64,000 nt of DNA from Fimbriosthenelais zetlandica (taxonomy: Eukaryota). Below, one piece after another: positions 24,401 through 48,400 of the stretch. The stretch lies in contig OZ365114.1 in assembly GCA_977030845.1 (NCBI GenBank), positions 17,112,001-17,176,000 on the forward strand, given 5' to 3'. The notes under the pieces were generated by a model. The model was not told the origin of the DNA, ran no database searches, and saw nothing but the letters and a program-made list of their open reading frames with translations. The translations under genes and the position numbers were made by a program. How positions within the stretch are numbered: the stretch's first letter is position 1; every line of letters starts with the position of its first letter.

Positions 24401-27400
24401 TGTTAAAGCATTTTTGATACAATGTCTGTTTTAATCACACTTGCTGAATAATGTTTTTCTGCAAACCTAAAACCAATGCCAGATATCCCCCACTGCCCAC
24501 CAATAGCGAGCTGCTCCTGTTACAGCCCAGTTTGAGGTTTCTCTCAGGCCTTCCATGCTACAGCACATTACACTAACCAGGGCGCCACTAAAGAGGCATT
24601 TAAAAGATGTGACACTGATTGCATCTCCCTCCCCCACCCCCCAACTGTTGTCTGTCTGCTGCTCAAAGCGGAACTCCTGCATTGGTGCCCTCCATGACCA
24701 GATCATGTCGATACTCTCTGACAACTCCTATTCAATAGGCAACATTGAAGCCAAGCATCTAATACTTTAATATCGCTCAGAGTATATATGAGGCCCATCT
24801 CCTCCATTGTTGGCCCGCTGTATTTTTTGAATTGCTCATTATAACAAATTGACTCCACTTTTGATTTGTGAGATGCAATTCTTGGGATTTTCTGCAATGA
24901 CTTATTGTGCTACGGACATTATGGAGATTAGAAAAAAACGGAAATGATAATAGCAGAAGGTATGACTTCAGAACGAATGTTGAAGTAAATTTCCTGCCGA
25001 ATAGTTTCCAGGAGGCAATGATACTTTGTATTCAGTAGATGAACTCATTCAGACTTCTCGTTGCAGTTACCTAAAGCAATTGTATCAATAACATTTACTG
25101 GAAACAGGGGGAAATTATTCTGACGTTATAGTCCTTTATTTACCTTTCCCCAGTCCGGATATGCTCCAGTAAGCGAAATTGAAGTGCTACTTCTACAAGA
25201 GAGAATTTATTTTGCAAAATTGCAACTTGTTGAGAAACTTTGGTGCCATATCATCTAAATGATGGATCTAGTCTGGTGCTCTTGGCATGTAACAGCCATT
25301 ATATTTTCAAAATTTAGTGTGGGTAACTCTCATAATTTCCATGTGATCTGCTCGCTGCAATAACCCCGGGCATGAGGCTTTTATGAGAGCGCCATTGATA
25401 GGAGCAGTTCACTATTGAGCTCAATACAAAATGAGCAATTCACAGCCAGGCAAACTGCTCCACTTCACTCAACCGCTCCCTCCTCCCAGCCAACAAGTCT
25501 GTCCATAAAGAAACCTCTTAGTGTGGTCTTGAAAAGGCATTATATAATGAAGCACCGTCAATGGTGGAGTGAGATGTTATTGTATAGAATAAATGAAGCT
25601 ATAATCATCCATATACGGTAGCCTGCAGTGATAGGCAATCAGCGAATGGAATTGTTACTAAATTATGTAATAATGAGTCTGTGACTGCAGCACTTGGCTA
25701 GAAACAGGCCTATGCATGCCTGTATAATCTATATAATACCTTCTCAGAGTATCAGTCCAGACCTTTCAATGTATAGTGAAAGTAAAGAATGTCTATCTTA
25801 TCTCAGTTCTAGCTCATTGTTTCAAGTGGAAGTGTACACGTGTACTTTATCCTGGTTTTCTGGGAGCTGCCTGTAGATAAGCAGTGGCTGAGTAGCTATG
25901 TCCGTGATCGTTTGTATTCGGCGTGATCCCTAAAAGACGATCAGACTAGAAACAAACCACAGCAGGTACAAATCAACAGATATTCCAGCTCAGCCCACAA
26001 CTTTTCCTGTCTGCTACCTATCGATTTATCGACCTACAACCACTAAAGCCCAGACCTAACCTTGTACTCCGAACTGTCATCCTATCAAATATTGCATGGC
26101 TGTATTTTTGTTAATGTTAGAGGACGCGAGTCATACTAATATTAGCCTATACTGCTGATATCAGTTTAAAGTCTTGGGGTCTCCTCCTCCTTCTCCCAGG
26201 CTCGTATAGTGTGAGTGTTATGAAGATGATGATGCTTACAAGTACTGGACCAGTGACAGGGCCTATACCAGCCGTACTGTTGCTGGGCTGTATTGATTGG
26301 GACTGTATGGCGGAAGGAACTGCTTCTTCAAGACTTAAATGAAAGGCGCCGGACACTGAGTTGCTTCTCAGACTCACAGATCTGTATGTGGTGCTGGCTC
26401 GTGCTTTTCTTGCTCTAGATGATGTTAGATTTTAGGATGGATTGATGGGAGGGTGGATGAGGGGGTGAGGGCTATAATGGGCCGGCCACTGAGGGCTCTG
26501 CAAGGCCTCATTTTATACTAAAGGGCCCATTTTGTCTTGAATTGAGTCCAAATTTTAGTATCAATCCATGACATGAAGATTCTTTGCCAGCCTTAAATTA
26601 CTCTCTTCAGTGGTTCGACTGAACCATAGGAAAGGGAGGCTTCTGCCAGATACCAAGTGTATGATATGCCAAGCCAAGGCTAGTTCTTTGTGTTCAAATG
26701 ATTTGCCCTTGGCAATCAGAGCAACTTGGAATATTAGTATGTTGCCCTTGTCAATTGTTCCAATTGTTCCCCATACAATACATGTTTATGACTGAATTTC
26801 TGTTGTATTGAGTAACACGATTGATTGTATCCCTCCCTGCATCACTGGCTGATGAATAATTGAGTGCATGTACACATGATTACATTTTGAAGTTTCCCCT
26901 CTGAACTCTGCCCCTTTGGTATAATGAATGTGAAATGGTGCTCCCTATAGTGCTCCATAATTCCGCATTGATCCGTCTGCTAGACGGATTGCCTTTCTCA
27001 TTAGTCTATTTCTCCCTTTCCAGATCTTTCCTTCGTTACAGAGACAGACAAATATATTTTGAAAAAGAAATAAACCTATTTTCCATGTCCTTACTACAGT
27101 ATAATTTTGAAGCTAGTGTTGCATATGAGCTCATAACACAAATCATCAGAAATGTAATGCATTGTGTTTTGTACAGTAAGGGTGCATTGGTAGTCTGAGT
27201 GGTTGAGTTCATTGAGTCCATATTTTTAGTGTATAGACCTATTGTAGCTACATATATATCAGAGTAACAGTACATGTAGATTGTATACCCACATGTATAC
27301 ATTGTATAGTAATGAACCCTGTACAGCTGTATATATATGTCAACACCGCCTCACTCTCTCCTCTTACTTCCACCTCCTCTGAGACCTATAAGTAAAGGCC

Positions 27401-30400
27401 CACCCCAGTCTTTCATCTTAATCAGCCTTTCAACTTGACCAGCTCTAAAGCTGACCCTGGATTGAGGTTTTTTTACAGCTCCTCGGGACAGTTCTAAGCA
27501 CGCAAAGAGCCCTTTAATTCACCAACCAGCCTCTCTCTGCCTCCACAGCAGAAGACTGACCTTCTCTTTTCTCATACTCAAAGCACCCGAGGTGTATGCA
27601 AAAAGGGTGGCCAGACAAATGAGCAAAGACCCTGGCCATTTGAAGACCATACATGTAATACACTAGCTGTCTTAAGATATAGAGACCCAGGCCATGTCCT
27701 TACATAATGTGACACGCTAGAGACGGGTTCTCAACCAGGCTCAATCTGAGGTCATGTTTTTTGTCCTTTGTTTGGTCTGGTGGTGTGTCTGGATCTCAGA
27801 CATTACTCAGTGATCACACATCTCATGATTCATCATATAGATTGTAATAAATCCCCGGGAGGAGAAAAGGGGCTGCACGGAAAGTGATACATTCATCTGG
27901 TGGATTGCAGTTTAAAATAGTGCGGCTCCTGGAATTGGATGCATAAGCCATATGGAAAACAATAAATCAGTTACTCTGTGGTTGATTGCACCCCCCCCAA
28001 CCCCCCCCCCCCCAAAAAAAAAAAAAAAAAAAAAATCGGACTGGACACCGTTGTCTGGGTGGACAGTATGCTTATCCATGCAGTGTCTAGGTATCTGCAC
28101 TTGATTCACAGTGGATACTAGAATCCAGCTGACAGGGCATATATACCCGTCCCCCTTTCTCCTATATCTACTCCCCCGCTTATCCATGCACTATCATTCA
28201 GTGCCCTCACCCTCCACCTCCCCCCACCAGACATAACGTCAATGTTAGCGTCCGACCAGACTCCATCCCACTTAGTCCTACCATAGTTGATTGAGTCTAG
28301 TCAAAGTCTGATGATTTTTTCTTTTTACTATTTTCTTCCTTCTGCTATGACAAATATGGTGGGTCAGACGGGGCCTTGTGGATTGGGACAAGGAGGGAAT
28401 GAGTGCCTGAGACTATAGGAGCCTTTGTCCATGCTACTACCCCCACTCCTCCTCACCCTCCCCCAGACCCCCACCATCTTCCACCTCCCCCATCCTCATC
28501 TCCCACCTGGGCCGTCTGCATCTCAATCCATGTCAATATAATCACCCTTACTCTGTGAACCCCCTACAGTAGGCGATTGCCCCGTGACCTCTCCGTGTTC
28601 AATCATTCACTTGAAATTGTATCTCCCAGGGATACGGCCATGCTCTGGGCAGAATTTCTCAATTTTCCCATCTTATCAATCTTCTTCTATCTTATAATGC
28701 ATTATATGGACACGACAATTAAATATTCTTTTGATTTTTGGTGTATCAACTGACCAAATATAACTGGAGATGATTTTTTTATTTCTTCCATTCAACTTCA
28801 GTGGTTTTTCTCCTGTCCCGAGCACACATGCAATTTCTGTTTGCACCTTTGTTCCTATCTTTGATTGATAAAAGCGTCATAAGATGTATTGATATTCTTT
28901 TAAAACCTGATCCTATTGCCCATGGACGGATTATATATAGCTACTTATAGGTTCATTACATAGAAGGCAGTGCGACATATAAAACAAAATGGGAGGGAAT
29001 GAAATAACATGGGATAAAGAATGGAGCATATAAAAAGAATAGAGTAGGAAATGGGAGAAGTGAAACATTGGGTGACTGTGTAGCACGTGATGACAGTGAT
29101 GCATGGAGACCTCGCGTGCGTTAATGGTTGGTGGTGTAAGGTGTGGAGGTAGACAGAGCTGGCTCTCACGTCCCAGGCCCACCTCTATATACCCGCTGCC
29201 AAATGTATCTTGATACCTTGAGCAGCTCGATTCCACTGAGGAGGGCTTTGTAATATTGAGTGATGAGAGCCTGTAGGGCTGGCATGGCTGGTTGATTTCT
29301 GGCTTGAGGCGGCGTGTTAATACAGCCTCTTAGTGCTTATTTCATACCTCCAACAGAATTATAGCTAGACTTCGTTTAATGGTCTGATTCCGTAAGCATT
29401 ATCCAAGTTTCCCATTGTTCTTGTCCACCCAGTGCTGCTAACTGGGATATCGAAGGCCAGAGTGCCCAGACAATTCGTTCATTGCCTGCACATGGTGAGA
29501 GGAATGTAAAAGAACCGTGCTGCCATTCGATAATAGCAGAAAATTCGGCGCCAGAAGCATGTTTTCCTTTCGTCCTGAGGTAGCTGAAAAATAATTGCTG
29601 ACTGGACATTAACACTTACAGATAATATTCATCCACCCTTGCTTCGTTCAACAATCCTATATTACTTGTGACACTTGTGACGAATAACATGTGACACATA
29701 AACAACTTCACAGAAGTTTTTTTTTATCCAACTTAGAGTTCTCGCGCGTCATTAAAAATACTTAAATTTTATAATCTCAGAACCGCAGGAGCCCTGCCAA
29801 CTCCAACACTCCCTACATATAAGAGTCTAGAGTTTTTTTCCGTTTCTTCCTCTTCCTGTCCTCCCATCATTCACTGACTGCCCTTCACGCCTCCCTCTGT
29901 GTGAGAGGTCGTGAAGGACCTATACAGGCTATAGCCCTGCCTGGGGAAAAGGTCCTTTCAGCTCAGCCCTCTACTCCGCCTATAGCCGTCACACTGACTG
30001 ACCGGTGGTGAGGGATTTAGACTGCTGGTCTAGCCAGTCACCAGACTCTGTACTGGTCTCACCCTCATAAACCACCTCACCTATTGCCCCGTCCTCTCTG
30101 CTCGCATTGCCTCCCTCCTCTCTGACCCCTTATGCTTAGAATCCAACATCAATTCTACACCAAAAACCCGGGACAGAAGCCCTTGATGCATTGCCTTGAA
30201 TACAGCATGTTGGCAAAGAGGATGCCCTTGTTCCAACCATGTAGCAGTCCTGAGGGATGGATATTCATATTACTGAATTGATTTTGTTCCCAAATTGTTA
30301 ACATGTTCAAATGTCATATCTTGCGGTACTTACCAGCAAAATCCGTTAGAACAATTTTCAGTATTTTGTGGGAAAATAGTTGTGTTAGCAAAGAGTGGTG

Positions 30401-33400
30401 TGAAGGAGAACATTATTATCATTGGTGATTTTGATCTTTTTGAGTATGTTTATGAACTATTCTGGGTTGATCCCCTCTGGGTCACTTTGTGATGGAGCTA
30501 ATCTTGAAATGTTTAGCTGTACTTTACATCCAGTAGGATTAATGTATCGCTATCCATCATATAGAGAGAGCCAAGTGTTGCCAGCAGCCAGGCCACGTGC
30601 CAGCATGGGGTATTTTCCCTGTCTGTGTAACACACACACCACCAAGGTTTACCTTCAAGTTTATCACAACGTTAGATGCTACTGACTTACATTGGCGGGC
30701 AAGGTCGGGGCAGGTGCAAGAAAAGTGAAGGGAGGTGCAGATAGGTGTAATCGCGTTACCATAGCAACGCTGTCGCTAGCTGGCCCTGTGTTATCTCTCT
30801 GCTCCTGTGAGGGGGTCATGTGATGTGGTCACGTGTCTGCACACCCCCTTCTCACCTGGATATGAGAAGTAGGTCATCGTTAGTTTACATTCATATCATG
30901 TTTATGTAAGGATAAGTTATATAGGTTTCTAATGAGGCATTCACCTATTTATATGATCTAAAAAAAAGTAATGCACCCTCCCAGTTAGGTCTCCCCCACT
31001 CCGAATCAACCCACTTTATATAAAACAAATTTGCATATTTTCCTAGAGATTCTTCTGTCATAGATCTTTGAAATTCTCACGTAGCTTCTTGGCTCTTGTG
31101 CAGCATGAAGTTTTACCTTTAAATATCCTATATTTACCATGATTTTCTATATAGGGAAAATCAATCAAATCCCTGATCCTCTAGGCTGTTCCACTGCAAC
31201 CCAGATTTAGTGAACCCTTTAGGTCAGCCTCCCTCATATTGGGTTCCCTTAGTAATCAATAAGTGTAGAGTATGCTATCATATTCACCATGCCTCTCTGT
31301 AATGTAACCCTGGCCCACCTTTCCCTATAATGGTCTTCCTACCTTTATCCTGTCCCATTTCCTACTGCTATTTCCAGCCCTTGTTTTGCCATTAATTAAA
31401 ACCTTAAAAAACAACTTAAAAACCTAAATTAGGATTCTACAATTAAAGGCAAAAGCTGTGCTATCTAGGTTTAGGAGGGGGGCATGCGTAACTTTCATTG
31501 GGAGAAATTTATTGCATTTAAACATGAATACCCCCTGATACTATAATTGGCCTGTCTCGTCTGGTATCAAATTAAAAAAATAATTGGAGGGTTCTTGCCA
31601 TTTCAATTAAGGGAATACATATTAATTTAATATACCCCTAGGGATTGCTGATGTAGTGGCGATTCAAATTTCGCTCAGTCCAAGAAAAAAACACTTCCCC
31701 CTCTACTGCTGATAGGCATCAGTATGTAGGGTGTGTGTTGACGGTTTTACTTGGTTCAACTTGGAAATAACCGTATCTGTTTCCTTTGTACATCCCTCAT
31801 GCAAGTTTAATTCAGGCAAAGTTGACTTTGCCAAAAGCACTCAAACAAATGTGCACATACCGGTTCATGTTCGGTTTTAAAAAGAGCACCATCGTGCTTT
31901 TCTTTGAATAGAGGTAATTGAGGGTGCAATCTGGCATCTTAATGTAAACCGCACTCTCATTTTCTTCCTATTTTTGTCATTAATAATAAAAAAAAGAAGG
32001 AATGTACGTAGACGTGCTTATTATACATTTATGACCATAAATGTTACCAAAGAATATGAAGGCAATCTTTGCATGATTGCCTTCAGTTAAACCAAGATAT
32101 TTGTTGATCAGTTTAATACAAAATATCATAAAATCTTCGTACAGTATGCATCAGTATAATAGGAGTGGATATGGTTTGAAAGTATAATCTATAGGGCTGA
32201 TGAACAGACTGCCTTTGGAACTAGTAATATATATCAGTATAGTCCAGTAGGTGTTCTTTGAAACTCTATGGCTTAATGGTATAATTGATAAGTGGTCTAT
32301 ACTTTGAAACTATAATGTTTGGTTTTGTAGATAAGTGGGTCTGTGTGTTGAGATTATGGTGAGGCGGTATAGAGGCAGTGTAATCAGACTGTATGTGAAT
32401 TCCTCCTCCAATAAAATATCCAGCACAAGATGATCATCTGCTGGCTGTGAGAGGAGGACTGTGTGGAGAGAGCTATCACCATGAGTGTGTCTGTACTATA
32501 GCGGGGCGGGGAGAGCTGCTCTCTCCCACCAACAACTCACCTCCTCCTCACTGTATACACTCTCCTGGCTGCTGTTATAGTTAACCCCACCCCCCTCACC
32601 CACCCATACAAACATACCCCTAGCCTAGAATGGGAGGAATTTTCGAGGAATGCCAGTGACCGCCCTGAGAGAAGGCGAGGGGGAGATGCTGCTGGCTTGC
32701 AGGCTGGCTAACTGGCATCGGGCGGAGAAATGATGCCACGTGGATCCGAGGGTTAAAACCACACAAGTGGAAAAGGACTTGCATGTGTATGACATGTGAT
32801 CGCCCCAACAAACATAGTTCACATTGGCCGACTTGAAATGAAAACCTTCTGAGATGACTTATGCTAAACTAGCCTTGTCAATAACTTGTGAAGGGAAACA
32901 ATTTGTTACGCTTGTGAACACTGAAGCAGATGAAATATCCCCAGTGGTACCTGTGTTTTGGATAATTTATTTACTATGCAGAGTCATTATTTGGGCCTAA
33001 GCCATGATATATTACCCCAATGTAGATCCAAGCATTTGCATGCCAATAAAGACATTGAAGCACCATCAATAGACTTCCTTCATTGATGGATTGCCTTCAC
33101 ATTAGATGCTGGTTGAAAGCTCCATGCATAACTGTACTAAGTATGTGGCCGGGGAAAGGTAGACTTTCCTGTATACACACAGCAGCATTAAGGTTAATTC
33201 TCCCCTTTGCTCTTACTCTCTGCTTGTGGCATAGATTTGCTCACTCAAAAACCTCACATAAAAACATATACCTATAGCCATAGTGCTTTACCGAGAAAAT
33301 AACCCAGAAAAATATCAATTTAAACAGAAACATAAGACATGGGGTGAACTTTGAATATAGACAGCCAATACCACCCGGCTTTTTTTGCCGCCAAATCTGT

Positions 33401-36400
33401 TATTGGCATTGTTATTGGAAAAAAGTTGTTCATTTATTTGCTGATAGAACCTATTGCAAAGAAGTAAGATCAAAACAGGAATGAAACCTTCTATCATAAG
33501 CATGATAAGTGAGTTTTGAAACCAAGATTTTCATGGATGATTTTGTCTCTATTGCACTACAAAATATCCAGCTTACTATTGGAACTACATGTATGTCTAC
33601 TCGAATTAGGTCTGTCTATTCATTCATTTTTTATATAAGTTTATTATGATTCTGGGATTGTCACCAGTGCAGCTTGTCAAACCTTTTTTTATATTTCTCT
33701 TAACTCCACAGTTATTAAGATGAATCATACATACACCTTCACTGATTCATCCTCAGTTTACATTTCTAATTTTCCTTGAAGGATGAGAAGTAACAACCAA
33801 TGATTTATAATTATTTGCTGACCCTAAAAATGATAAAGCACAAAAGTGACTCATTTCTCTCAGCATGTCTGTGTCTTATAATCTATATAAAACAACCACT
33901 TAACATTGAACCCAGGTGGTTGCTAACAGTGCTGGTAGTTACCATAGAAACCATGGTAACCATAGTGAGAAGTGGGCTGTAGGTCTGGCGGTGAGGAGCT
34001 GTTGATGGCCGTATGTACCTTGCAGCATAGTAACAGGCGTTCAGGCTACATGTAGTCGTAGTGAAATAGCCAGTAAAATAACATCACAACATCTCATAAA
34101 AAACTGTTACAGTCTTCTACTAAATACACCTTGGGTCAACCTTCCCCTATAGGCTATTTTTCCAAACACAGAATGTACTATAATTTACTCATATATTATG
34201 GATCCAAGCTCGAGTTTAATAGAATAGAGTGCTGAAAGTGTCGTTTATGAGGAATAGGGTCCAGTGTTCCTGACCTATATATAATATAGGTATGGCAATG
34301 GATCCTTATATTACAGTCCATGGCAGCACATTAACTACCTTCTTTTTGTGTATGAATACATTCATGACAGACCTCCACTGTTTGAGCCACCATCATGGCC
34401 ATCCCATCAGTGAATTATAAAATCTTTTGTTCTGCCTTTCAGCTCATACTGTAGGCATAACATTTGCCATGGCATTGCTCTACGACCATTCCGCTGTGTC
34501 AAGATATTGTTTCATCTCTATTGTTTCAAGCCCTTCTGCCTCCAAGGTCGTCCGCGACATGGGCTTTCAAATGTTTCTCTGGTGAGACATAAATGGATAG
34601 GCACAAGGGAGAGCAATTTAAAAGAACAATAGAAATCCTTGGGGCATTATTTTTTTTAGAGGGAAATCGATTTTTAGTGGAGAATAGAAAGTAGAAAAGA
34701 TAATTTTTTTATCGGGACTGCCCAGGAGGACCTGTTCATGAGGGTCTTAACATGGGTGTTGTAGGGACATTGGACTATCTCTTGCACTAGTTCAACTCTA
34801 GCTGTTTCATGCATGGGTATGAAAAGCTCACTGCTATGTGCTTCGGTTTTCTCATTTCATTGTTAAGGCGTGTGAAGGTAATGATGGTATAGTTGAAGGT
34901 TAGCGTGACAGACTGATACCACCCAGGTCCCTATGTGATGACTGATAGTCGATACACCTACCATACCTCCCACCAATCAATACTCAACAACCCATGTTTG
35001 ATGGGAAGAAAATAAAGGGTTCACTTACTTACTTACAATGTATAGTGCTGGCAATAGGTATCACCTCTGCCAATCTCTCTTCAATGATGTGCTATATTTG
35101 CATCATCAAAGTCCATTAATACTATGCTTAGGAGCTTCGTCTCTGAACATAAGGTGGCTCAGAGTATTGTAGTTTGTGGATTACTTTCTGTATCAATTGT
35201 ATATAAATATATTTCTTAGCCTCTCAGGAGTGGATCATATTGATCGTGACTGAAGCTCTAACCGGTATAGAAGCCAGACCTACGCGTCACCTTCACTCTT
35301 ACCTCCCCACCTTTGATCTACCTCCCTTAGAGATTGATATTCTACGGCGATTAGCCCCGGTAATTGATTGACTGATCTCCCAGTCCGTTCAATTGAAGTC
35401 CCCGTTCCCCTGTGCTCCCCTTCTTTGGGAATATCTTTCTTTTAGTTTCCACAGGCAGTCATCTGATACCCAATCTGACTTTAACTTGAAGATCTTAATA
35501 GTGTTTTTATCTCTAGAAAATGGCTAAATTGAATATTTACTCCAGAACAATTGAGCACTATATATTTGTTTGTCGGAGCTTTCTGTAACGGTTGCCTCAA
35601 TAGAAAGATATTTCATCTTCTCTTGTAAAAAAAAAAAAAAAAAACTAGGGAAAAAAGGTGTAATACCCATTCGCCATTAGTAAACATGTTCAGACAGGGA
35701 AAAATGTCTTTGACATTTTAGAAGATGATGCAGTCACCTTGTTGAATGGGGCCTGCCTTCACATGTGGCCGTTAGGTTAATTTGTCTCAATAAGAAGCAG
35801 GGATCAGCCATTCTGACCGTGTCTATGTCTACACTCAGGCTTATCTTTCCTGTTAGCCAGGCAGGAGGCTGGCCCCCTGGGGAGGAGAATAGAATAAATC
35901 ACTACTGCCCTCAATCCATACTCAGCTTCACGGCTCGAGAATAAAAGTAGAGGTTAAAGCTTTCATCGCTTTACCCCAACACTCATGTTATGAACACAAG
36001 CTTCATGTGTTCATCCTCTCAGATAAAAAAGCAAAGGGGATGAGAGGTTATAGGTCATCAAATCAGCTCTACCTTCTCCCTGTATCCACATATTGCTATT
36101 GTATACGTAGGCTACCTTATCTTCAAATCCCCTCGTCAAGCAAGAATTATGTCAAGCAAGAATTATGTAGATTTTTGCTCAAGAATCCTATCTAGATTGC
36201 CTTTGTCCTTGTCCAAGTATCGATATATGCTATCAAACTGCCTGGCAGACATTGCAAAACAAATTATATGGATTTACATCCATATCTACATTATTTATAT
36301 AATATAACCTACTTTCCATATAACACTAACACTGTCCCTTGGTCTTAGACATCCCATGAATTGAAAACCTGCACTACAGTTCCCATTTCTTACCCTACTC

Positions 36401-39400
36401 ACATCTACTTTCTGACACTTATCTGACCTCAAAATGTCAGCAATTCCCCAAAGTTTCAAGCGGTACTTCAACAGGCAGTGTCTTCCTCTATGCATTGAGA
36501 GCCTCTAGGGCTACCCCTTCTGTACACACTATTAGATGCTCCACCTTAAGTATCAGTGATTTTTTCCTGGCCTGATTCCGGATCTTGAGCCTGTATAGAT
36601 CCTCAGGTTGTCACACCTGATGACGTCACCTATTGTTGTGCTCAGTCAGTGAGGGGACTACACATGTATGATGATGTATTACACTGACGGTTAAAAGACT
36701 AAGCCCTGCTGCCAGCCCCACTTGACAGCAGGAGTCTGTCACACTGTCTGAGGGGCTAACATGAGCACAGCTCCCACCCAACCACTGCTCCCAACAGATA
36801 AGCTCCACTGTGGTTAGAATGTGGACAGGGGGACACACTAAGATGTGATCCAGTACTCAGTGATTAAGAACTAGATTTAGAGATGTCTTGTCTTCATTCC
36901 AACTGCAGTGTCTTTCGATGTAACTGTAATTTTGAAATAGAAAAGTAACCGTTGTAAATTGTGCTCTAATAGTTGATCTGCTCATGCGTTGAACTTGCAC
37001 CCTAGAGTGGCGCAACTTACCTGACTAGCAAAGGAAATTGGTGCTCGCTAAAATTGTGCATCAGTGACCTCTGAAGTGTGCTAATATTAAATATAAACTG
37101 CTTTAATTAGACAGGTAACTTTTGTAAACTTTTCTTATTAGAAAAATAACTTTTGTAAACTTTGTTCTAGTTATCCATTGTTGTAACTTTTGATTCCTTC
37201 TTTTGCAGGTGAGTTTGCTTCGATGGTAGATGCCACTTGGTTCAAGTGTCCAAGATGGATACCAAAATAAGTACATCAAAAGGTGAAGGTAGGGGAAATG
37301 TCCAAACCTGTAATAGTGCATAGAGGACATGCCAATTCAATTGCACTATCTGAATTAGCCTGTCTTAAAATTTAACCCAAGAAATAACCCTCTCTCACCC
37401 TAAACTCCAGCTTGTTTTGTGGGCCATTTTCGGTTGAAACTTGACATTTCACTGAAAATATCCAGATGTCCTCATGGTGAGATCTATTTCTTGCCATTTG
37501 ATGTTTTTTTCAAGCAGAGAGTGACATCCTCCTCCGCCTTGCTGTAGCCAATCATGAGGCCTGTAGGACAGTGAGTGATGGAGGAGGAGCAGGAAGCTGA
37601 GCTTCAGCCTGTCCACTCCACCCTGGGCCTAATTCATCTGGCCCTCCCCCCTCCCTGCCACCTAATGATTGGATGGAGGGCTTATTGAGTCTGAGTTTGG
37701 CAGTTGGTGGAGCAGTGGATCGATGTAGAATTAGCTTGATGTGTACGACTCCACCAATCATTTATAAGACACCCGATCGTTGCCGCTGCCACAGTCTTTG
37801 AGACTAATAACAGAGACGAACAGCAATTCCGGCCGGGATTTAGGCCCAAAGAAAGACAACATTGTCTGTGGGCACAGCAATTCGAAAAGGGACTATAGAT
37901 GTACTTCCCTCTCTCATTGAATTTTAACTTTACAAATTGAATGAAAAGGTCATGCTTTTGTGCTGTAGTCCTTTCACCAACTTTTGCAAGTTGAAGTTCT
38001 CAACTTAAAACTGCTCATGTACTTTCAATGGATTTACAGTGTAATTAATACATTGTAAATTTAATGTATTGTCCTATCCGTTGACAAACTAGTTAATGAC
38101 ATTTTATGTCCACAGAACATTCTAAGTCTTTCTCTACCCCAGAAAAAACTCCTTGCTGCGACCATGAGTGCGGTGATATATGGGCAATGAAGCGTTTTAC
38201 CACTAACAATCTCTGCCCAGGCCCACGCTCGCATTGATTTGCCATTTTCCCCAATCAAATCAAAAGAATGTGGTGGCGAGGCCGCTGACAATTTTCCCTG
38301 TAATATTAGGTAAAGCGGGCCGAATGTCCTCCTTGATTTGCTCATCGAGCAACTCTTGGGTAGATATTTTTCTTCTTTGTGAAGCTTTAAATGTATTCTC
38401 CCTGCGCCATTAGATCTTTCGCTCCTTCCTTGTCTGTTTGCCCCTAAGTGTACTACTCACAGTGATTTTTCACTGGCCTTATTTAGGATCTTAAGCTTGA
38501 ATGGAGTGCCATATGATAGTGTCACACATTGTTGTACTCATTCAGTGACGGGCAAACACATATATGATGTGTGCGATTCTTATACCATTTTATCAGAGAG
38601 CGCGATGACTGAGGCCAGACAAATGAGACAGGGACGAGAATGGATTATTATTATTATAGCCGGGCTATGTGCTGACGGTGACCACTTGGCCAGCTTTCCC
38701 ATTTCAGTCTTGCCACCACTTATCATCGATCCATTGCATGTCTCCTCTGCTGTGTGTATGGGATAACCTCTGGTCCCCTCCTCCCATTTACTTGTACATA
38801 TCCTTCCTTCTGGTGGATCCAGTAAGAGGTGGGGGGTTAGAGGTCAACCATACAGTCGTTTAAGTCATCCACACACCGCCTTGATTTTTCCTTCTCGTGA
38901 TGTATCTACTCATCTACTAACGCATCCTATGAGCCTCCTTCCTGGAAGACAAAGCTAAAATTAGCCTTAACACAAGATTGCGCCGTTTAAGAATTTTAAT
39001 TAAAAGGCGTGTCTCTCTATTTAGAACTGAGTAATCGGCGCTATAAATCAGCCTGAATTAAAGGCGGTACATGTGCGGTGATGCAGAAAGACAAATGAAA
39101 GGGAATAAGAGGGTGGAATGGTAATGTCCTAACGAGGATGGCGGGTTACTTTACAGTCGGCAATGTGATACTATTCTAGCTTCATCTACTTATACTACCA
39201 TTGTACTAATTGCTGAGGATAATGCTTAGGGTATCCCAGATTTACATAGGAATGCTGTCTCAGAAATAGTTGAGATATTAATTGAATTTCAGTTTTGACT
39301 TCTTGACCCTTGTGTCCACTAGTGAGTTAATTTCTAAAGCTAAATGGTATTATTTTTGCACTCATTTTTGCCGAAAATTCTTCGGGCATCCCAGATCTAA

Positions 39401-42400
39401 CATGGCGACAATACATAGAAGAAATGCTCAGAAATATAACATCAATTTTAGCTTTGATTCCTTCAATCTTTAACACTGTTTTCCAGTGAGTTGTTTGTGA
39501 TTGACGGCTACAAGTAGGCAGGATGAGAATCCGCATGGCTGTTTACAGCATGTATGCTGGTCTGGGAACCGTGTGAAATGATCAATGACTTACCCTGCCC
39601 CCAACTCTCCACTCCACTACCCGTCCAACCGTGGTCCACACCCTGATTAATGCTATCCCTGCTTGCCGTCCATAACTCACTTACTGGATTAGATCACGCT
39701 TTCCAGTTTTCACTTGGATATTGTCAAATCATTAATGATGCTAATAAATTTTATATTTTATATAAAATTTGTATTAGCGATCTGGTGAATACGAGTAAAT
39801 TTGTGTTATATTGACCAAGAATTATCAGGTTTTTCTCCCATGAAGTGTTAATTAGACAATGGGCAATTTCTGTTCAAATTTATATTATTTAATATTAATA
39901 ATATAAATGTGCTCTAAATTTATACTCCATTGGAAACAAACCATGGTCATCAACTCCAGTAAAGTGACTGACAAAGTGATAAACGTTCTTCTAGATTCCT
40001 AGAATTGGCCTGGTAGAGTTGTGTATTTTCCTGCCTGGCTTTTTTCCTTACATCGCCTGATGATGTATCAAGTTATGTAACTGAGATGATGATATGAAGG
40101 AAGAGGAGGTAGGAAGGGCAGGTGGGGGGCAGCTAGGGCTGATGACCCCACTCAGGTCCCGGAAACACTCAGACTATGATGGATACCTGAACAGGTAGAC
40201 GCTGATGAAAAGCTAGCAGAGGGCTGGACAAGCAACTCACTGAAGAAAATGTCCTCGTTGGCCCACCATTATTTTATATCATATAAAATATGTTATAAAT
40301 TTTAGGGTTCCTGGATTTGTGAAACACCAAAACTGTTAATAGGTTTTAAATTATTATAGCCCTGCTTGATTCTGATATAGGCTTACTACAGATGCTCTCT
40401 TATAGAAGTTTAGAGATTAGAAAAACAGGCTTTTGGCTCTTTTATGATGAGGTAAGAGAAATAGGATAGGGAGGATTGAGAAGGTGAGTAAGGTTAAGCA
40501 CATATGTCCCTTCCATGTGTACATAACCTTTCATCTGATGATACAGCTTGGCGCTCCACTCCACCCATGTATAAAGTGAAGAAGGCCCTGCACGTCAGAG
40601 CTGCGGATACACCTAATGTAAGGGATCAATTCACACTACCCTGACTTTTCAATCTTTCCTTCAAATAAAGCCTGGGTTAGGCAGATCAAGCGTAGAATCA
40701 AGCTTGGGCGCCGGATGTTTGCTTGAACCTGAGATAAATCAAGTAAATCTGTCTATCTGCTGGGTAGGACCCCAGCCCTCAGCCCCATACCGCCTAGCTG
40801 GCCAGCGGCTCAGCCCTGCTTTATTGAACCATTAACTCTACAGATACTGCTGATTTAACGTAGAAACAATAGACTTCTAATCCTGATGTGTTTGACAATA
40901 ACCAGCTTTCTATAGTGTCTATAGATATGAATTTATAGTAGGACATGCATAGTTCTTTTGTAAAAAACTTATGAAAATTGTCGAATGTGCCAGGGAATAT
41001 GGATAAAAAGAAATGAGAGGTGTCATATATAGCATTATATTCATTGAACCTCCATCTTAGTATTGGTTTAAATACTTATTCAGGAGACAATACTGGGACG
41101 ATCTGATGTGTCTGTAAACTATCTGAGAAGGACAGCTCAGTTTGCTATCTTGTGCCACTGTTACCCAGTGCTACATTGTTGGTGGAGCCCAGTATGGCAC
41201 AGAGAGCAGGATCATAATGGTGTCATTTACATGAGATCTAAATCACATGTTGACTCCCAACAGCAATTCTACACATCCAGTCTGTAGTCGGATAGCAAGA
41301 ATTAAATACCAAGAATCAGATTTCTTTTGCTACCGTGAGATATTTCCAATATTGTTCAATTCTTCACTGACTTTAATATTGAACATAAAATTGTGAATTC
41401 ATTCGTTTCTAGTCAGGTCATGAATTGGTCCCGATTTTATGCCATGATTGTTGCTTTAATGGAATATTTGAATCTAGTTGTGAAATTTATTGAGGCCATA
41501 TTTCAAGGTGAAGATGCTGTCTTAATGGCGACTGAAGCACATCTTTCCATCATGGCAGTCTTCATTCTCCTCAATTTTTATCCTTATTCAGCATAACACT
41601 GAAACCGCCCACCTCCCTCATCTCTGATTAAACATTAACTTTCCATGAAAAATGCGATATTAATTGGAAATCTGGGGAAATTGTGAAAAAGGAGTCTCTT
41701 TGAAGTGCAACATTTGCCTTGGGAATTAAGTCTTAAAACAGAACTGTGTAAACAAGTCAACACGGACTGAGATGAAGATAAAATAAATGTAATATATTTG
41801 CCCATAAATATGATGCAACTTTACGCGTATAATGTTATGCATCCATCAACTCATCCAATCATGATATACCGCGATCGACCCTTTATTCCCACCTCAAAGC
41901 TCCTTAGAACGAGGCCCATGTAAGTTCCAGCCTCTTTCATATCACTTCACCAATTGTCCCTGTGATAGACCACTTTCCATCCAGCCTCTATCCAGTCTGA
42001 GATGGATCTATATAGAACATAAATCTGGCGACTTGTGGTCGCATTAAGGCTAGATCCTACCCGCCTTATCTGCCACCAGGAAGCACGTGTAAGGAAGGCT
42101 CTTACTCCTCCCTGAATGAGGCTAATCATGCATATTGCTTTATGGTATTGCACCAAGTGTGACAATGGACGGGACTGGAATACCTCCTAGAGTGGTGGTC
42201 AATCCATGGTGGGTGGAAGGGTGAGGGAAGGGTGGACTGTTAGGATAGGAAGGAAGCAAGGAAGGAAGGTAGGGAGGGAAAATGAGATGTAGGGTAAGGG
42301 AGGAGGGAGAAGGGTGGGAATCGAGAAGGGGGAGGGCACAGATTGATTCGTGAAATAGGGACGAGATGGAGTATCGAGGGAAGATAATATCAACGAGCAT

Positions 42401-45400
42401 TTGAGGGAAGACAGGCAGATGGAAACGTAGGGAAAGCGAATACAGGGTGGGAGTACAGATTGGCGAGTGGAAAAGGGACAGGGAGAGAGAAGAAGGGATG
42501 GGATAGTAGTATAGAGAAGTGGGGTGATGGGAGTTGATATATGGAGGGGAGGAGCTGTGAGCGGGAGGCAGGTTAACATGTTGATGTTCGTCTCACGTTC
42601 ACTAGTTAACCGTGGCATTTAGTTACCATGTAGAGGGGTGAATGCCCTGAGAGCTTGCAGTATGGGTGGCTGCTGCTCTGTGTCACGGTCTTATGGGTAA
42701 CGCTGACTCAGCATCCCAGACACGGGTTAACCCCTGTCTACCACCATCCATCCTAAAGGTCACACTGCATAATATAGCATTAATCACCGCAGGCAAATTG
42801 ACCGTAAAGTATAATAAATTTAACAAATGTGACAAATAATATTCATATTTTCTAGATATAATTTTCAGCTGAAAATGTATAGCCTGTCCATGAATAGACT
42901 TTGATTTTGTTGGAAGTGAAAGTCCAGCCTATCTCCCATTAATTCACTACCTAAATGATAGTTAATTGGCGGGAAATTCACTCCACCATTACATACTATG
43001 ACATAGTCTGTTATTGAACACTGAAAACATATCGATAGAATGTCTCAAATACTGACAGCCTTCTGATGTTATTGGACATTTAAGATTTATTGATGGGACG
43101 TCAGGGCTGGAGACAGACTGAGAGGAGGAGGGGGTTTGTGGTTTGAAGGCTGTAATTTTCTTGTCGGTAACAGGGTCTCAGCTCTGCTGTAATTTGTGTT
43201 GCTCTCGTGAATGGCCGTCAGAAACATACACGTCCCGCGGGGCTTGGCTGTTCATTTCTCTGACGGCTCTATAACAAGCCTCACAAAAAGCACATTGTCG
43301 ACGTGCCATTTATGAGTAAATTTACCTATTCACGCCTCGACTAGGATGTCTTTTCACTGCTTTCTGTGTCCGGCCATGGACTGTTTGCTGCTCAATGTAA
43401 CCCACAACATCTGTAATACTTTGATACTGTGGTCTTAAAGACCCAGTTTATGTGTGGTTCAATTCTAGTTCCAAGGTCAGGCATAGATGAAAGGCTATTG
43501 CTTTGCACTGTCACAAGGTTGGATCAGAACATTACCTTTATAAATCCCTGCTTGTAAATTTAACAATTTCATTTAAAATAATATTTAATTTCATCAATTG
43601 TCTCCTGGCTGTTCAATAATATTGAGGATGGGAATATTCAGGCCACAGACGCCCTCGGTTATTATTCCTAAACAACACCCATAATTCCAATTATATAATA
43701 TTTCCTTTAATGAGGTAGCCTCATGCATAAAATTATACATAAGAATTTTAATGCTTTCCTGTGTACACCATGTACCGTTTGGGCTGCTTGGAAGGGTAGC
43801 AATAAGTATAGGGGTGAGAGTTAGTGGTGTGAGAGGGGTGGTATACTCCCACTATTGGTATATATCTAGTGTTTTACCAGCTGTCACTGGGGACTGGACT
43901 CGGGTCGGTGGTACACAAGTATAGACCACGTTTCACTAAGCTTTGTTTGCTCTCTCCTTCATTATCCCTCCTGTCATTGTCAGCTATTGATTGTTTACAC
44001 ATTGTTCCCCCCTTTCTCTCCTCCTCCCCTCAACACAATCCAAGCCATGATTACATTGCAATGATTGATACCAAACCAACTCAGTCTTGTCCCCATGTGA
44101 CTATGAATATTTGCTTTCAAGTGTATTAATTCAGCAGGAAGACAGTATTGTGACTTGATGTTGTATCTCATTTTGCCTCTAATCGTTCCCATGAGGAAGC
44201 ATGCTATGATGACCCTGTGTTTTCAAAATGTCAGTTTACTGTACCAGGCTCATGACACTGCTCCATAAAGAACACCTGTAAATTTCCCTCTAATGTTCTA
44301 TAACTCAATGCTTGCCTCATGGCAGCTTAAACCACCAACACATGAATGTATATCCTTATATTTAACCACTGATAATAGGCATCCACCATGCGGGCTTCAC
44401 ATCCACAGCCCCTAATACGTAATAGAACCATCTAATTGTGAGTATCGTTATTGAAATGGACACACGTACCCAGCTCTGAAATGTGAGATCTTTTATGATG
44501 TCTCCTATTTGATATCTATGAAGTGGCATGTATTATAAAGTACTGTATTGTGATCTTGTTCTGTATGTAGGCACAGTACTGGGCTAATTGGGAATGAAAT
44601 TCTTCCAGCATGGGAACACAGCAGTTGTCAAGTCTGCCAGCATCTCTTCATCAAGCTTGACAATAGATTCAAAGTATATATAGCTACCCTGACGAGCATT
44701 TAGCAAGAATAAAAAAGTCCTTCATGTGGGACACTGGGAGCCTTGAACAAGGCTCATGTCTATAAAAGGAACTTATGCATAATGTATGTACTAGACATTA
44801 AATGAATTATTAGTACATAATATGTCCATTTTATACACAGCCATCTTCCACAGCCATTTTCGCAGCTCAACCCTTTTGCACTCCTTTCGACCGGTTTTTT
44901 TTATATGTATTTCATATGATCTATAAAGGAAAGCGTATCTAATCATTTCTGCAATTTTCCATTATAGTTTCATTTGGAATTCTGGGGCTGTTGTGTCCCG
45001 CCTGGTATCAATATGGAATTTGATGGCCCTGTGCCAAGTCTATGATAACCAGCATGTATTTTTCCTCTCCCTCAGGCACCATGCTCCTCTGTGTAGGGAT
45101 ATATAGGGCTGTGTGTGAGTAGGGCATGGAGATGGGGGTGTGGTCAGGGCTCCCATGCCGGTATGCTCTCTCTCCCCTTCTCCGCCTCCCTCTCCCTTCT
45201 CTTTCTCTCAAATTGCTGCGGGTATAAAATATTGCATTTCCATGAAGTTTCCAGTGGACTTAAAACTAAAATTAGTTGGGCGTGACCACTAACTTTTCTC
45301 GTTGCAGTGCCTATTATTAATACATGTATTAGATATGTAGTTATTTTTTTAAATTCTCACATGCTTAGAATGATGAAAAATGAAAATGTAGTTCAATGGG

Positions 45401-48400
45401 AAACAGTTCCCACAATATTGAAAGAGTCCATTGCTAATGCTTCTAAATTACAATAGGAAGGATGGAGTCAGGCGAGCCTGTTTGGTCATGCGATGGACTT
45501 GCTCCCTGACATTCGCTCTAAATGTGTCGGGTGTGTTGTAATTTTTCAATGTGAGGTAACCATATTAGAGGTCTGCTTGCCCACTTGTTCTCCCTGCTAA
45601 CCTCGCGTGGGAATCATGGTTAGGGCCTTTTAGCTGTATTGGTGTTCATCCGCTATTGTTCATCATTGAGAGCTATATAAGGGAGATGTTAAGACCTTGT
45701 CTTCATTTCCCTCCACTCTATTCACTGATGTCATGGGAAGCACGTGCACTGACTGTACAATATGATGGCTCGTCACGTCTTCATCCTCTTATAGGTCAAC
45801 CCTCCAAATATAGGTCCATCTTTTATGTCTCTATTAAATATTGCCTTCTCTGGCATGTAGCGTACACTCCCGTACGTGTACATGTATTTTCGCCTCAATT
45901 CAGAGCGTAATTGACCAGTTTTTGTCCGCTTCTGTACAAGGCAACATTGCTTCAATTTGCAGTTTGAATTTCCCACTGCTGAACCAATAACGTTTTCTCA
46001 ATATTTTAATTTGGCATTTTTTGGACTACTTGTATGTTGAGAGGCTATAGAGAGAGGGGACCTGGTTAGCCGGTGGCCCTAATTGTGTACATTACTCATT
46101 CACCACTCCCTCCCCTGTCTGTACAGAGTTCCTTTACTCTTGTTTATTGCTTCTCAATGAACTCTTTGTATTGTTCCGTTTCCTGTGGGAGGGAATACAC
46201 ATGCCTCAGTTGTACTAATTGGGATGTAGACATAAAAGATAAAAGCTTGTACATTACATCGTCTGCATCAAATTATACACTTCCGCTTCAAATGTGGTTA
46301 TAAAATAGTTCTAATGTATATGGGGAGTAGAAGGTGGAAAGTTTTAATATATTAGCGAGACTGTTCCACGATGCCATACCAAGTCATTCCCACCTCCGAC
46401 AGTGGAACATGATCTGTGGAAATCTCTTCTGACATGAAAAGCTTTTTCCCTTTCACTTTCAGCTGAAAATATGCCACATTGTTACAATGCATTACCATCT
46501 AGTGACATTGACGAGTCCTTTGAAAATATCGCAGGGGCAGTAACCTTCTACGGCAGGACTGTCGCAGAGGCGGTGAATGAGATTTGGGAAAGAGATAGAT
46601 ATATATGTATGGCATGGACTTATTAATCATTTTGATTAAATCTGGCGTCCGCAAAGAAGGTCCTTTATAGGCAGGGGAGGTCAATTCGCATTTGCCTCTT
46701 TGCATCAAGTGACAGAGTAACGCTCAGCCAGGACCAAATTTTAATTTCCATCTACTACTGGGCATTTACACTGTAGCTGGTTGTGTCTTTTCTAATGACA
46801 CCTTGTCGATTTCACATGGAATTCATGAATCGTTATACCAGGAAATAATTCTAAATATTCCATGTGATGTACTCATTCATATTCAGCGAATCCGAGCACA
46901 TCGGAGTTCAGCTGATTAAAGATAGATGGTAGAGCCGAGGATGAAAAAATGGGTTTCCCCTTTACTCCTTTTACAAACATCAAAGGTCTGGCTTATAGAG
47001 ACATGATTGCCGGTGATGTGGAGTGGACCAAGCATGCTGGTGATAATGATGAAATATTACTTCACATCAAAGGCTGGTGGGCACGGTGTGACTGGTGCCG
47101 GAGTCAGATACAATATTGGATCATAATTTACCGCCCTCCACACCAACACCTGATATTAGACTAATTGGATGCCCTCCCGACCACTTACTCACTGGAGAAG
47201 CCAGGATATGGACCAGTGTCTGAATTAAAATGCACTGCTTTAGACCATAGACTTATTCGCTCATGTATAGAATTTGGTATAGATCTAATAACAAGATATC
47301 TGCATAGATCTGTCATTACAATGATGTCCAGGACTGTCTTTCAAGTCCCGTATATCACTCCTGTAGTTACCAGTCTCTTGTACATATATTGTCCTTGCCA
47401 GGAGGCAGAGGTGAATGCCCTGTGTTTGGTGAAACGAGATGCATTAATCATTCAAGCCCTTCCGTCCCCCTTCTAGATTCATGTGCCCAACCTCTTCCTC
47501 CCTGGAGTCCCAAGCGCCAGAGGGATTTATAATCTCTGAGTTTAATCAGATGAATAGACATTTAATGTCAGGACAAATGTCCAAGATGGCTTAAAAAGGT
47601 TCCATGTAGGATCATGTAGGAAATCTTTTAAAATATACATAACAATCTGGAATATCCAAGTGCACGTTCAACTGGCTCCTTTATACAGAGCTGTTCTTGT
47701 GATCAGCAACAATCTGCTGTGATAAATCAAGTCTGTAGAGGGAGAAGTTCAGGAATAGGCCTGTCAGGATGTTCATGCCCTAGCCTGAGAGGATCGACTG
47801 AAGTAGAGCCTTGACTGTACAACAAGGGTTGGCCTCTATCGACCTCTATAGATCTCTGCATACAATCAGGTTGAGGAGATCTTCATTCAGATATAGCTGT
47901 GGTTGTGGGGGAGCTCAGAGCGGTTATTAACGATTTTCCTCCTTGTAATACATGGCCGACTGGGAATGAGTATAAGGGTGAACTTGGTTCTATCTTAAGG
48001 CATCAATAAAAGTATAACGCTCCTCAGGCGTCATTAAACATAACGCTCATCAGGCGTCGTCAAACATAACGCTCATCTGGCCTCATCAGTAGCCCTATGT
48101 TCCAGTGAACATTATTTTATGGGATGTTAATAACAACAGTACCGAACCCTAAAGCCATTACATGTAAATTATTGAGAACACCGCCGAAACCCCAAATGAA
48201 TCCTTGTAATTGTTCATTTGCCGTTCAATATCCACATCAATACGGAGATAATTATAACGAGAGGATGATGGGAGCATTATGGTGGAGACAGTGTATTGGT
48301 GGTGAGCATTGGCCTGTGAGGGAGATTGAGCTCGTTGATTTGAACTGCTCTTGTGGGAGAGCTAGTTTTAAAAGGCCTGTCAATGCTACTCATTCTCCAA

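What the first reader, a model, noticed from the sequence alone, without database searches (positions are those of the whole stretch)
37183..37294. Near-perfect recursive splice site almost at the midpoint of the giant intron, with a poison RS-exon option
Seen: strong acceptor TTCCTTCTTTTGCAG fused to a consensus donor GTGAGT on the sense strand, dividing the intron into 21,767 and 22,950 nt. Repeated TAACTTTTGTAAACTT branch-like words lie upstream (37115-37190). An alternative donor GAAG|GTAGGG at 37288/37289 would create an 80-nt exon with an in-frame TAG at 37227-37229. Established: ratchet points subdivide long Drosophila introns, and vertebrate RS-exons often carry premature stops. Inference: Fmr1 intron 3 is removed in two steps, with a possible NMD-coupled switch on FMRP dosage. 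I know of no report of this for Fmr1.
Basis: partly seen in the sequence, partly recalled or inferred. Interest (0 to 1): 0.75.

Follow-up and report, generated by a model that had tools for sequence, protein, structure and literature searches.

The report
Predicted recursive splice site, Fmr1 intron
Halfway through the one giant (44.7 kb) intron of an invertebrate Fmr1/FXR gene, an intron end is fused directly to an intron start and followed by a short hidden exon, so the intron is probably removed in two steps as in fruit flies; no RNA data could be examined, and the proposed role in controlling FMRP dose has no support.

Summary
On the sense strand, TTCCTTCTTTTGCAG|GTGAGT lies at 37208/37209 inside a 44,717-nt phase-0 intron between coding exons 3 and 4 of an FMR1/FXR homologue. 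It splits the intron 21,767 / 22,950 nt. A second donor (AAG|GTAGGG) follows 80 nt downstream, and there is an in-frame TAG.

The site is single copy. It is the only site at or above its score in 547 kb of strand scanned. The strict motif occurs 282 times in the 447-Mb genome, about 160-190 of them outside repeats. Null estimates are 89 (reversed pattern) and 110 (Markov).

Genome-wide, 33 non-repeat motif sites, this one included, carry a donor-like AGGTRNG 15-100 nt downstream, against 6-8 expected (P below 1e-11). The hidden-exon lengths peak at 36-59 nt, as in Drosophila. Fly-type recursive splicing therefore very probably operates in this spiralian genome, and this site fits it. The regenerated donor is stronger than the hidden-exon donor, so the 80-nt exon should normally be skipped.

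Not tested: RNA (no runs listed) and conservation (no close relative reachable). The NMD dosage switch is unsupported. The scan had already noted 17 similar findings, all listed ones on other pieces of this genome. This is a new member of a known kind.

The parts
15341..15441 (+). Coding exon 3 of the FMR1/FXR homologue. It ends in phase 0; its natural donor GAG|GTCAGT is weak (3.6 bits, C at +3).
15442..60158 (+). Giant intron 3, 44,717 nt. All other mapped introns of the gene are about 80-900 nt (one, near the window's end, about 2.2 kb). No ORF in it has a Pfam match and it has no Rfam match.
37094..37192 (+). Local 31-nt duplication plus a third copy of (G/A)TAACTTTTG, at 37115, 37146 and 37183. 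The proximal copy gives a TAAC branch-point candidate about 21-22 nt upstream of the AG. Branch use is inferred.
37190..37208 (+). Polypyrimidine tract and recursive acceptor TTGATTCCTTCTTTTGCAG. The acceptor half scores 9.5 bits. There is no AG between the branch candidate and the acceptor AG.
37209..37214 (+). Ratchet-point donor GTGAGT. After exon 3 is joined it becomes GAG|GTGAGT (7.6 bits).
37209..37288 (+). Predicted cryptic RS-exon of 80 nt (not a multiple of 3). It has an in-frame TAG at 37227-37229 and stops in all three frames.
   Evidence: (direct reading of the sequence)
37289..37294 (+). RS-exon donor AAG|GTAGGG, 5.3 bits. Donor-like sites this good occur once per 3.3 kb of strand. 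A weaker AAG|GTGAAG lies 6 nt upstream.
60159..60313 (+). Coding exon 4 (Agenet/Tudor 2), with a strong acceptor CTCTTGCAG|A.

Best explanation
The site at 37208/37209 is a fly-type intronic recursive splice site (ratchet point) in the giant third intron of an FMR1/FXR homologue of a spiralian invertebrate.

Inferred mechanism:
1. The strong acceptor (branch candidate near 37186, pyrimidine tract, CAG) is recognised together with the donor at 37288/37289 as an 80-nt cryptic exon.
2. The exon 3 donor is spliced to 37209, which removes the first 21.8 kb.
3. The junction recreates a strong donor, GAG|GTGAGT. It outcompetes the weaker RS-exon donor and is spliced to exon 4, removing the remaining 22.95 kb together with the cryptic exon.
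4. The mature mRNA therefore carries no trace of the site.

What is shown: the anatomy, the rarity of the motif, and the genome-wide enrichment of this architecture. What is inferred: every splicing step.
For: - Exact juxtaposed acceptor and donor on the sense strand of a 44.7-kb intron.
- It is the only site at or above 14.2 bits in 547 kb of strand, and far above the rest of the intron on either strand.
- It is single copy, not inside a repeat.
- The strict motif has 282 genome matches. Of these, 79 belong to one repeat family, leaving about 160-190 non-repeat. The reversed control gives 89 and the Markov expectation 110.
- Non-repeat motif sites form same-strand pairs within 50 kb more often than chance: 3 against 0.38 expected, P = 0.007, with no opposite-strand pair.
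- 33 non-repeat motif sites, this one included, have AGGTRNG 15-100 nt downstream against 6-8 expected (P at most 2e-12). The reversed control gave 4 matches. Implied RS-exon lengths peak at 36-59 nt. The 61-108 nt class, which holds this site, has 13 sites against 3-4 expected.
- The regenerated donor is stronger than the RS-exon donor, and the RS-exon is out of frame with a stop. These are the properties described for fly cryptic RS-exons (PMC8605326).
- The site lies at 48.7% of the intron. In flies 63% of introns over 40 kb have a recursive site, and single sites tend to the midpoint (PMC6110457).
Against: - There is no RNA evidence of any kind: no run was listed for the intron or for exon 4.
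- No close relative could be reached, so conservation of the AG|GT is untested.
- The orthologous intron in two molluscs (19.4 kb in Haliotis rufescens, 9 kb in Liolophura sinensis) has no comparable site; the best scores are 3.4 and 3.1 bits.
- The 80-nt RS-exon is longer than the 36-59 nt mode of the genome's other candidates.
- My weight matrix is generic, not trained on this species.
Confidence: 0.72

Rival explanations
1. Chance juxtaposition: a pyrimidine-rich stretch ending in CAG happens to abut GTGAGT. It is not maintained by selection, and the intron is normally removed in one step, perhaps with occasional noisy use of the site.
For: - Null estimates of 89-110 such motifs genome-wide mean that a good share of the roughly 160-190 non-repeat motifs are chance.
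- The orthologous mollusc introns have no such site.
- There is no RNA and no conservation evidence.
Against: - Chance of a motif on the sense strand of this particular intron is about 0.5-1.4%.
- A donor at least this good lies within 100 nt only about 3% of the time.
- Motif plus donor is expected about 4-8 times in the whole genome, against 33 seen.
- A chance site would have no reason to lie on the sense strand of a giant intron near its midpoint.
Confidence: 0.17
2. An ordinary alternative exon rather than a ratchet point. Either it is an 80-nt poison cassette exon that merely happens to begin with GTGAGT, or 37208 is the donor of an alternative non-coding first exon from a promoter inside the giant intron, spliced to exon 4.
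For: - The 80-nt segment has a good acceptor and a usable donor.
- It carries a premature stop, as poison exons do.
- Giant introns often host internal promoters (general knowledge).
Against: - GTRAGT at the first six bases of an unrelated exon has a probability of about 5e-4 (base composition).
- For an alternative first exon, the 9.5-bit acceptor half immediately upstream would be the coincidence.
- The frame entering 37208 is closed by TGA at 37191-37193, five codons upstream, with no ATG in between (direct reading).
- The stronger regenerated donor predicts skipping, not inclusion.
Confidence: 0.08
3. Repeat-borne or assembly artefact: the motif belongs to a transposon copy, or the giant intron is a misassembly.
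For: Two repeat families in this genome do carry perfect AG|GT motifs: 79 copies of CTTYCCTCACAGGTAAGT, and a satellite-like CTTTTTTTACAGGTGAGTAATGG... family.
Against: - The 301-nt core matches only itself in the genome.
- The window has no N.
- Exons 1-3 and exons 4 onward are colinear with FXR proteins and have no second copy in the 144 kb searched (window plus 20 kb upstream and 60 kb downstream).
Confidence: 0.03

Closest known systems
Drosophila intronic ratchet points with cryptic RS-exons (Hatton 1998; Burnette 2005; Duff 2015; Pai 2018, PMC6110457; Joseph, Kondo & Lai 2018; Joseph & Lai 2021, PMC8605326)
   Same: - (Y)nNCAG|GTRAGT on the sense strand of an intron over 40 kb.
- A single site near the midpoint.
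- A downstream donor that defines a short non-coding, out-of-frame cryptic exon.
- A ratchet-point donor stronger than the RS-exon donor.
- Genome-wide, the candidate RS-exons of this genome peak at about 36-59 nt, like the roughly 50 nt reported in flies.
   Different: - The host is a spiralian, not an insect: in the FXR tree it falls in the annelid/nemertean/mollusc clade, outside the sampled molluscs and nemerteans.
- This RS-exon is 80 nt, longer than the mode.
- The deep conservation and the RNA intermediates that define fly ratchet points could not be checked.
Vertebrate RS-exons (Sibley et al. 2015; EJC-dependent control, Blazquez 2018 and Boehm 2018; cited from my own knowledge)
   Same: Recursive site recognised by exon definition. 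The RS-exon carries a premature stop, so inclusion would give an NMD substrate.
   Different: Vertebrate RS sites sit mostly in introns over 100 kb in neuronal genes, and their RS-exons can be included after use of non-canonical upstream exons. Here nothing indicates regulated inclusion.
Poison cassette exons coupling alternative splicing to NMD (for example in SR-protein genes)
   Same: A short exon with an in-frame stop inside the gene of an RNA-binding protein.
   Different: Poison exons are typically highly conserved and regulated by their own protein, and they do not start with a consensus donor. Neither conservation nor FMRP-dependent regulation was testable here.

Membership tests
Fly-type intronic ratchet point (zero-nucleotide recursive splicing) | Acceptor fused to donor, (Y)nNCAG|GTRAGT, on the sense strand of the host intron | tested here: met
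   TTCCTTCTTTTGCAG|GTGAGT at 37208/37209 on the gene's strand
Fly-type intronic ratchet point (zero-nucleotide recursive splicing) | Host intron is among the longest (tens of kb) | tested here: met
   44,717 nt; nearly all other mapped introns of the gene are under 1 kb
Fly-type intronic ratchet point (zero-nucleotide recursive splicing) | Short cryptic RS-exon bounded by a downstream donor (about 50 nt, variable) | tested here: met
   Donor AAG|GTAGGG gives an 80-nt exon. Sites this good occur once per 3.3 kb. The 80 nt is longer than the 36-59 nt mode of this genome's candidates.
Fly-type intronic ratchet point (zero-nucleotide recursive splicing) | Regenerated ratchet-point donor stronger than the RS-exon donor | tested here: met
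   7.6 against 5.3 bits with a generic weight matrix
Fly-type intronic ratchet point (zero-nucleotide recursive splicing) | RS-exon content non-coding or out of frame | tested here: met
   80 nt (80 mod 3 = 2), TAG in frame, stops in all frames
Fly-type intronic ratchet point (zero-nucleotide recursive splicing) | Strong conservation of the SA|SD motif in related species | tested here: inconclusive
   No close relative was reachable. The distant mollusc orthologous introns, 19.4 and 9 kb, lack such a site, but they are too far removed and much shorter.
Fly-type intronic ratchet point (zero-nucleotide recursive splicing) | RNA intermediates: exon-to-ratchet-point junction reads, saw-tooth coverage, segment lariats | not testable with these tools
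   No sequencing run was listed for the intron or for exon 4, so read laying could not be used.
   TAG at 37227-37229 in the exon-3 frame
   The RS-exon donor is weaker than the regenerated donor, which predicts skipping. In flies, exonic elements can override donor strength (PMC8605326).
   No RNA data
FMR1/FXR gene family (host gene) | Tandem Agenet/Tudor domains, then KH domains, colinear with FXR proteins | tested here: met
   Agenet match at 28.5 bits, over the cut-off, in exon 4. tblastn is colinear with FXR proteins, with 71-82% identity in the KH exons. The tree places it among spiralian FXR proteins.

The most novel reading that the evidence does not exclude
The 80-nt stop-containing RS-exon is included at a regulated rate, perhaps in response to FMRP itself or to neuronal state. 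The recursive site would then double as an NMD-coupled dosage control of an Fmr1 orthologue. More broadly, fly-type recursive splicing with roughly 45-nt cryptic exons would be ancestral to protostomes rather than an insect speciality.
Probability: 0.07. Interest if true: 0.7.

Novelty: new member of a known kind. Interest (0 to 1): 0.4.

Why it matters
Recursive splicing is documented by RNA evidence in Drosophila and vertebrates. The paper library held nothing on it for molluscs, annelids or Fmr1.

This site, together with the genome-wide excess of motif-plus-cryptic-exon sites measured here, suggests that the fly-type mechanism, including its short hidden exons, also works in a spiralian. 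That would push its origin back at least to the protostome ancestor.

For Fmr1 itself the consequence is modest. It would explain how one lineage-specific giant intron in an otherwise compact gene is spliced accurately. It also gives a concrete, cheap RT-PCR or RNA-seq test.

Tried and rejected
- RNA evidence: the look-up of sequencing runs on 36200-38200 (kind rna) and on exon 4 (kind any) listed no run. Read laying could therefore not be used.
- Close relatives for a conservation test:
  - An HMMER search with exon 4 gave at most 64% identity.
  - The word-index search with exon 4 found nothing.
  - A full-length search with the nearest hit, and a profile search mixing that hit with three window exons, surfaced no near relative.
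  - The best exon-4 hit, an ENA contig, had no DNA available.
  - Five annotated spiralian orthologues were not on record for DNA retrieval.
I did not try to get those letters another way.
- An i.i.d. null for the weight-matrix score gives only about 2 sites genome-wide. I rejected it as far too optimistic, because pyrimidine tracts are much commoner than i.i.d. composition predicts. I used the empirical counts instead.
- Nested gene or RNA in the intron: 8 of the 12 ORFs of at least 95 aa were scanned against Pfam and none matched, and the intron has no Rfam match.
- Tandem Repeats Finder found no array at the site. The repeated words are a short local duplication.
- A self-search of 20 kb around the site returned only one SINE-like repeat, at about 29387-29631. 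The listing was truncated, so it says little about total repeat content.
- The head-to-head WD40 neighbour of mollusc Fmr1 was not found in the 34 kb upstream here.

Full report
**What is there.**
The window carries, on its + strand, the 5' part of an FMR1/FXR homologue.
- Coding exon 1 starts at 14208 (MEELAVEV...). Exon 2 ends near 15217. Exon 3 is 15341-15441. Exon 4 is 60159-60313. From 60590 to about 62544 the remaining exons are packed with introns of roughly 100-400 nt.
- Exon 4 matches Pfam Agenet above the curated cut-off. The KH exons are 71-82% identical to the nearest FXR protein.
- The intron between exons 3 and 4 is 44,717 nt and phase 0. It holds no ORF with a Pfam match and no Rfam match.
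- In a maximum-likelihood tree of FXR proteins the window's protein falls inside the well-supported spiralian clade (annelids, nemerteans, molluscs; 100/98). It lies outside the sampled molluscs and nemerteans. The host is therefore a non-arthropod, spiralian invertebrate with a 447-Mb genome.

**The observation.**
- TTCCTTCTTTTGCAG|GTGAGT has its junction at 37208/37209. The two intron segments are 21,767 and 22,950 nt, so the site sits at 48.7% of the intron.
- A second donor GAAG|GTAGGG at 37288/37289 gives an 80-nt segment. TAG at 37227-37229 is in the frame set by exon 3. The other two frames are also closed.
- The word TAACTTTTG occurs three times in the whole window, at 37116, 37147 and 37184. 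This arrangement comes from a local 31-nt duplication plus a third copy.
- The nearest copy offers a TAAC branch candidate 21-22 nt before the AG, with no intervening AG.
- The 301-nt core is single copy in the genome.

**Is it more than chance?**
I scored every AGGT with a generic matrix for the intronic halves of acceptor and donor.
- The site scores 14.2 bits and is the only one at or above that value in 546,684 strand-bases of this genome.
- In the intron the next best sense-strand site scores 8.8 bits (51815). The best antisense site scores 8.0 (37020).
- Genome-wide, the strict pattern YYYYYYYYNCAGGTRAGT has 282 matches, against 89 for the reversed pattern.
- Of the 282, 79 belong to one dispersed repeat and about a dozen to a satellite-like repeat. 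That leaves about 160-190 non-repeat sites.
- A Markov expectation from the two overlapping half-patterns is 110.
- The motif class as a whole is therefore only about 1.5-2 times enriched, and many members must be chance. For this one intron the chance of a sense-strand match is about 0.5-1.4%.

**Does this genome use recursive splicing at all?**
Two tests made here say yes.
- First, on the two contigs whose matches were listed completely, non-repeat motif sites form three same-strand pairs within 50 kb against 0.38 expected (P = 0.007). There is no opposite-strand pair.
- Second, I asked for the motif followed within 15-100 nt by a donor-like AGGTRNG. This gave 51 matches against 4 for the reversed control.
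- After removing the satellite family and double counts, 33 distinct sites remain, this one among them. That compares with 6-8 expected from the background frequency of AGGTRNG (P at most 2e-12).
- The implied cryptic-exon lengths pile up at 36-59 nt (20 sites against about 2.4 expected). This is the same size range as the roughly 50-nt cryptic RS-exons of Drosophila (PMC8605326).
- Thirteen sites, including this one at 80 nt, lie at 61-108 nt, against 3-4 expected.
- Two more same-strand pairs 21-24 kb apart appear among these 33 sites, on C19 and C35.
- Sites with motif plus donor are therefore mostly not chance: roughly 70-85% in the class this site belongs to, before counting its position on the sense strand of a giant intron.
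- Earlier notes of this scan had flagged 17 recursive-splicing candidates, all listed ones on other pieces of the same genome. I treated those as leads. The counts above are my own partial test of them.

**How it most likely works.**
The anatomy matches the exon-definition model of recursive splicing.
1. The strong acceptor and the donor 80 nt downstream define a cryptic exon.
2. The exon 3 donor, which is weak (GAG|GTCAGT, 3.6 bits), is joined to 37209.
3. The junction recreates GAG|GTGAGT (7.6 bits), which is stronger than the RS-exon donor AAG|GTAGGG (5.3 bits).
4. By the donor-competition rule shown by mutagenesis in flies (PMC8605326), the regenerated donor is then used, and the cryptic exon leaves with the second 22.95-kb segment.

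In flies 63% of introns over 40 kb have a recursive site, and single sites tend to the midpoint (PMC6110457). This site is at 48.7%. All splicing steps are inferred; none is shown.

**What argues against.**
- No RNA data could be examined.
- No close relative was reachable, so conservation of the AG|GT, which is the hallmark of fly ratchet points, is untested.
- In the abalone Haliotis rufescens and the chiton Liolophura sinensis the orthologous intron is also the longest of the gene (19.4 and 9 kb). It holds no comparable site there; the best scores are 3.4 and 3.1 bits.
- These species are distant and their introns much shorter, so this only shows that the site is not an ancient feature of spiralian Fmr1.

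**The dosage-switch idea.**
The in-frame stop and the length of 80 nt (not a multiple of three) are what fly cryptic RS-exons generally look like, and those are constitutively skipped (PMC8605326). They are not evidence of regulation. With the regenerated donor the stronger one, regulated inclusion is the less likely outcome. I give it about 7%.

**Comparison and novelty.**
The site meets every sequence-level criterion of a fly-type ratchet point. Conservation was inconclusive and RNA intermediates were not testable.
- It is a new member of a known kind.
- The paper library held nothing on recursive splicing in Fmr1, molluscs or annelids.
- The more interesting point is taxonomic: fly-type recursive splicing with short cryptic exons probably operates in a spiralian.

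**Verdict.**
- Recursive splice site: 0.72
- Chance motif: 0.17
- Ordinary alternative exon: 0.08
- Artefact: 0.03
- Interest: 0.4

Noticed in passing
G000, genome-wide (e.g. C1:1147891-1147908, C21:19200833-19200850): A dispersed repeat family carries a perfect ratchet-like motif, CTTYCCTCACAGGTAAGT, in 79 copies. A second, satellite-like family (CTTTTTTTACAGGTGAGTAATGGTCAGTCAC..., e.g. C10:28421872-28422500) repeats CAG|GTGAGT about every 41 nt. Both inflate motif counts and would give false recursive-site calls in this genome.
   Followed up: partly
G000:C19:20827213-20851583 (-), C35:536162-557669 (-), C1:58907627-58915683 (+), C10:27067872-27087492 (+): Same-strand pairs of strict ratchet motifs 8-24 kb apart. 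The C19 and C35 pairs each also have a downstream donor 32-59 nt away. These look like arrays of recursive sites in other giant introns.
   Followed up: no
window 29387-29631: A short SINE-like repeat of about 230 nt, with at least 39 copies at 70-91% identity across many contigs. It was the only multi-copy element reported in the 20 kb around the site.
   Followed up: no
window 51815 (+) and 37020 (-): Second-rank AG|GT junctions. CCCTCAG|GTGAGT at 51815 on the sense strand scores 8.8 bits with a weak pyrimidine tract. TAGTCAG|GTAAGT on the antisense strand, only 190 nt from the main site, scores 8.0 bits. Both are probably chance.
   Followed up: partly
window 15439-15447: The natural donor of exon 3 is GAG|GTCAGT, with an unusual C at +3 (3.6 bits). 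It is weaker than the donor regenerated at the ratchet point.
   Followed up: no
L026:8124-27559 and L027:5789-14746: The intron at the same phase-0 position between the two Agenet/Tudor exons is also the longest intron of the FXR gene in an abalone (19.4 kb) and a chiton (9 kb). This suggests a position-specific tendency to expand. In both molluscs a large WD40-repeat gene lies head-to-head upstream; it was not found in the 34 kb upstream here.
   Followed up: partly
window 18894-19481 (+): The longest ORF in the intron (195 aa, with two nested ORFs in other frames) has no Pfam match. It is probably spurious or a decayed element.
   Followed up: partly
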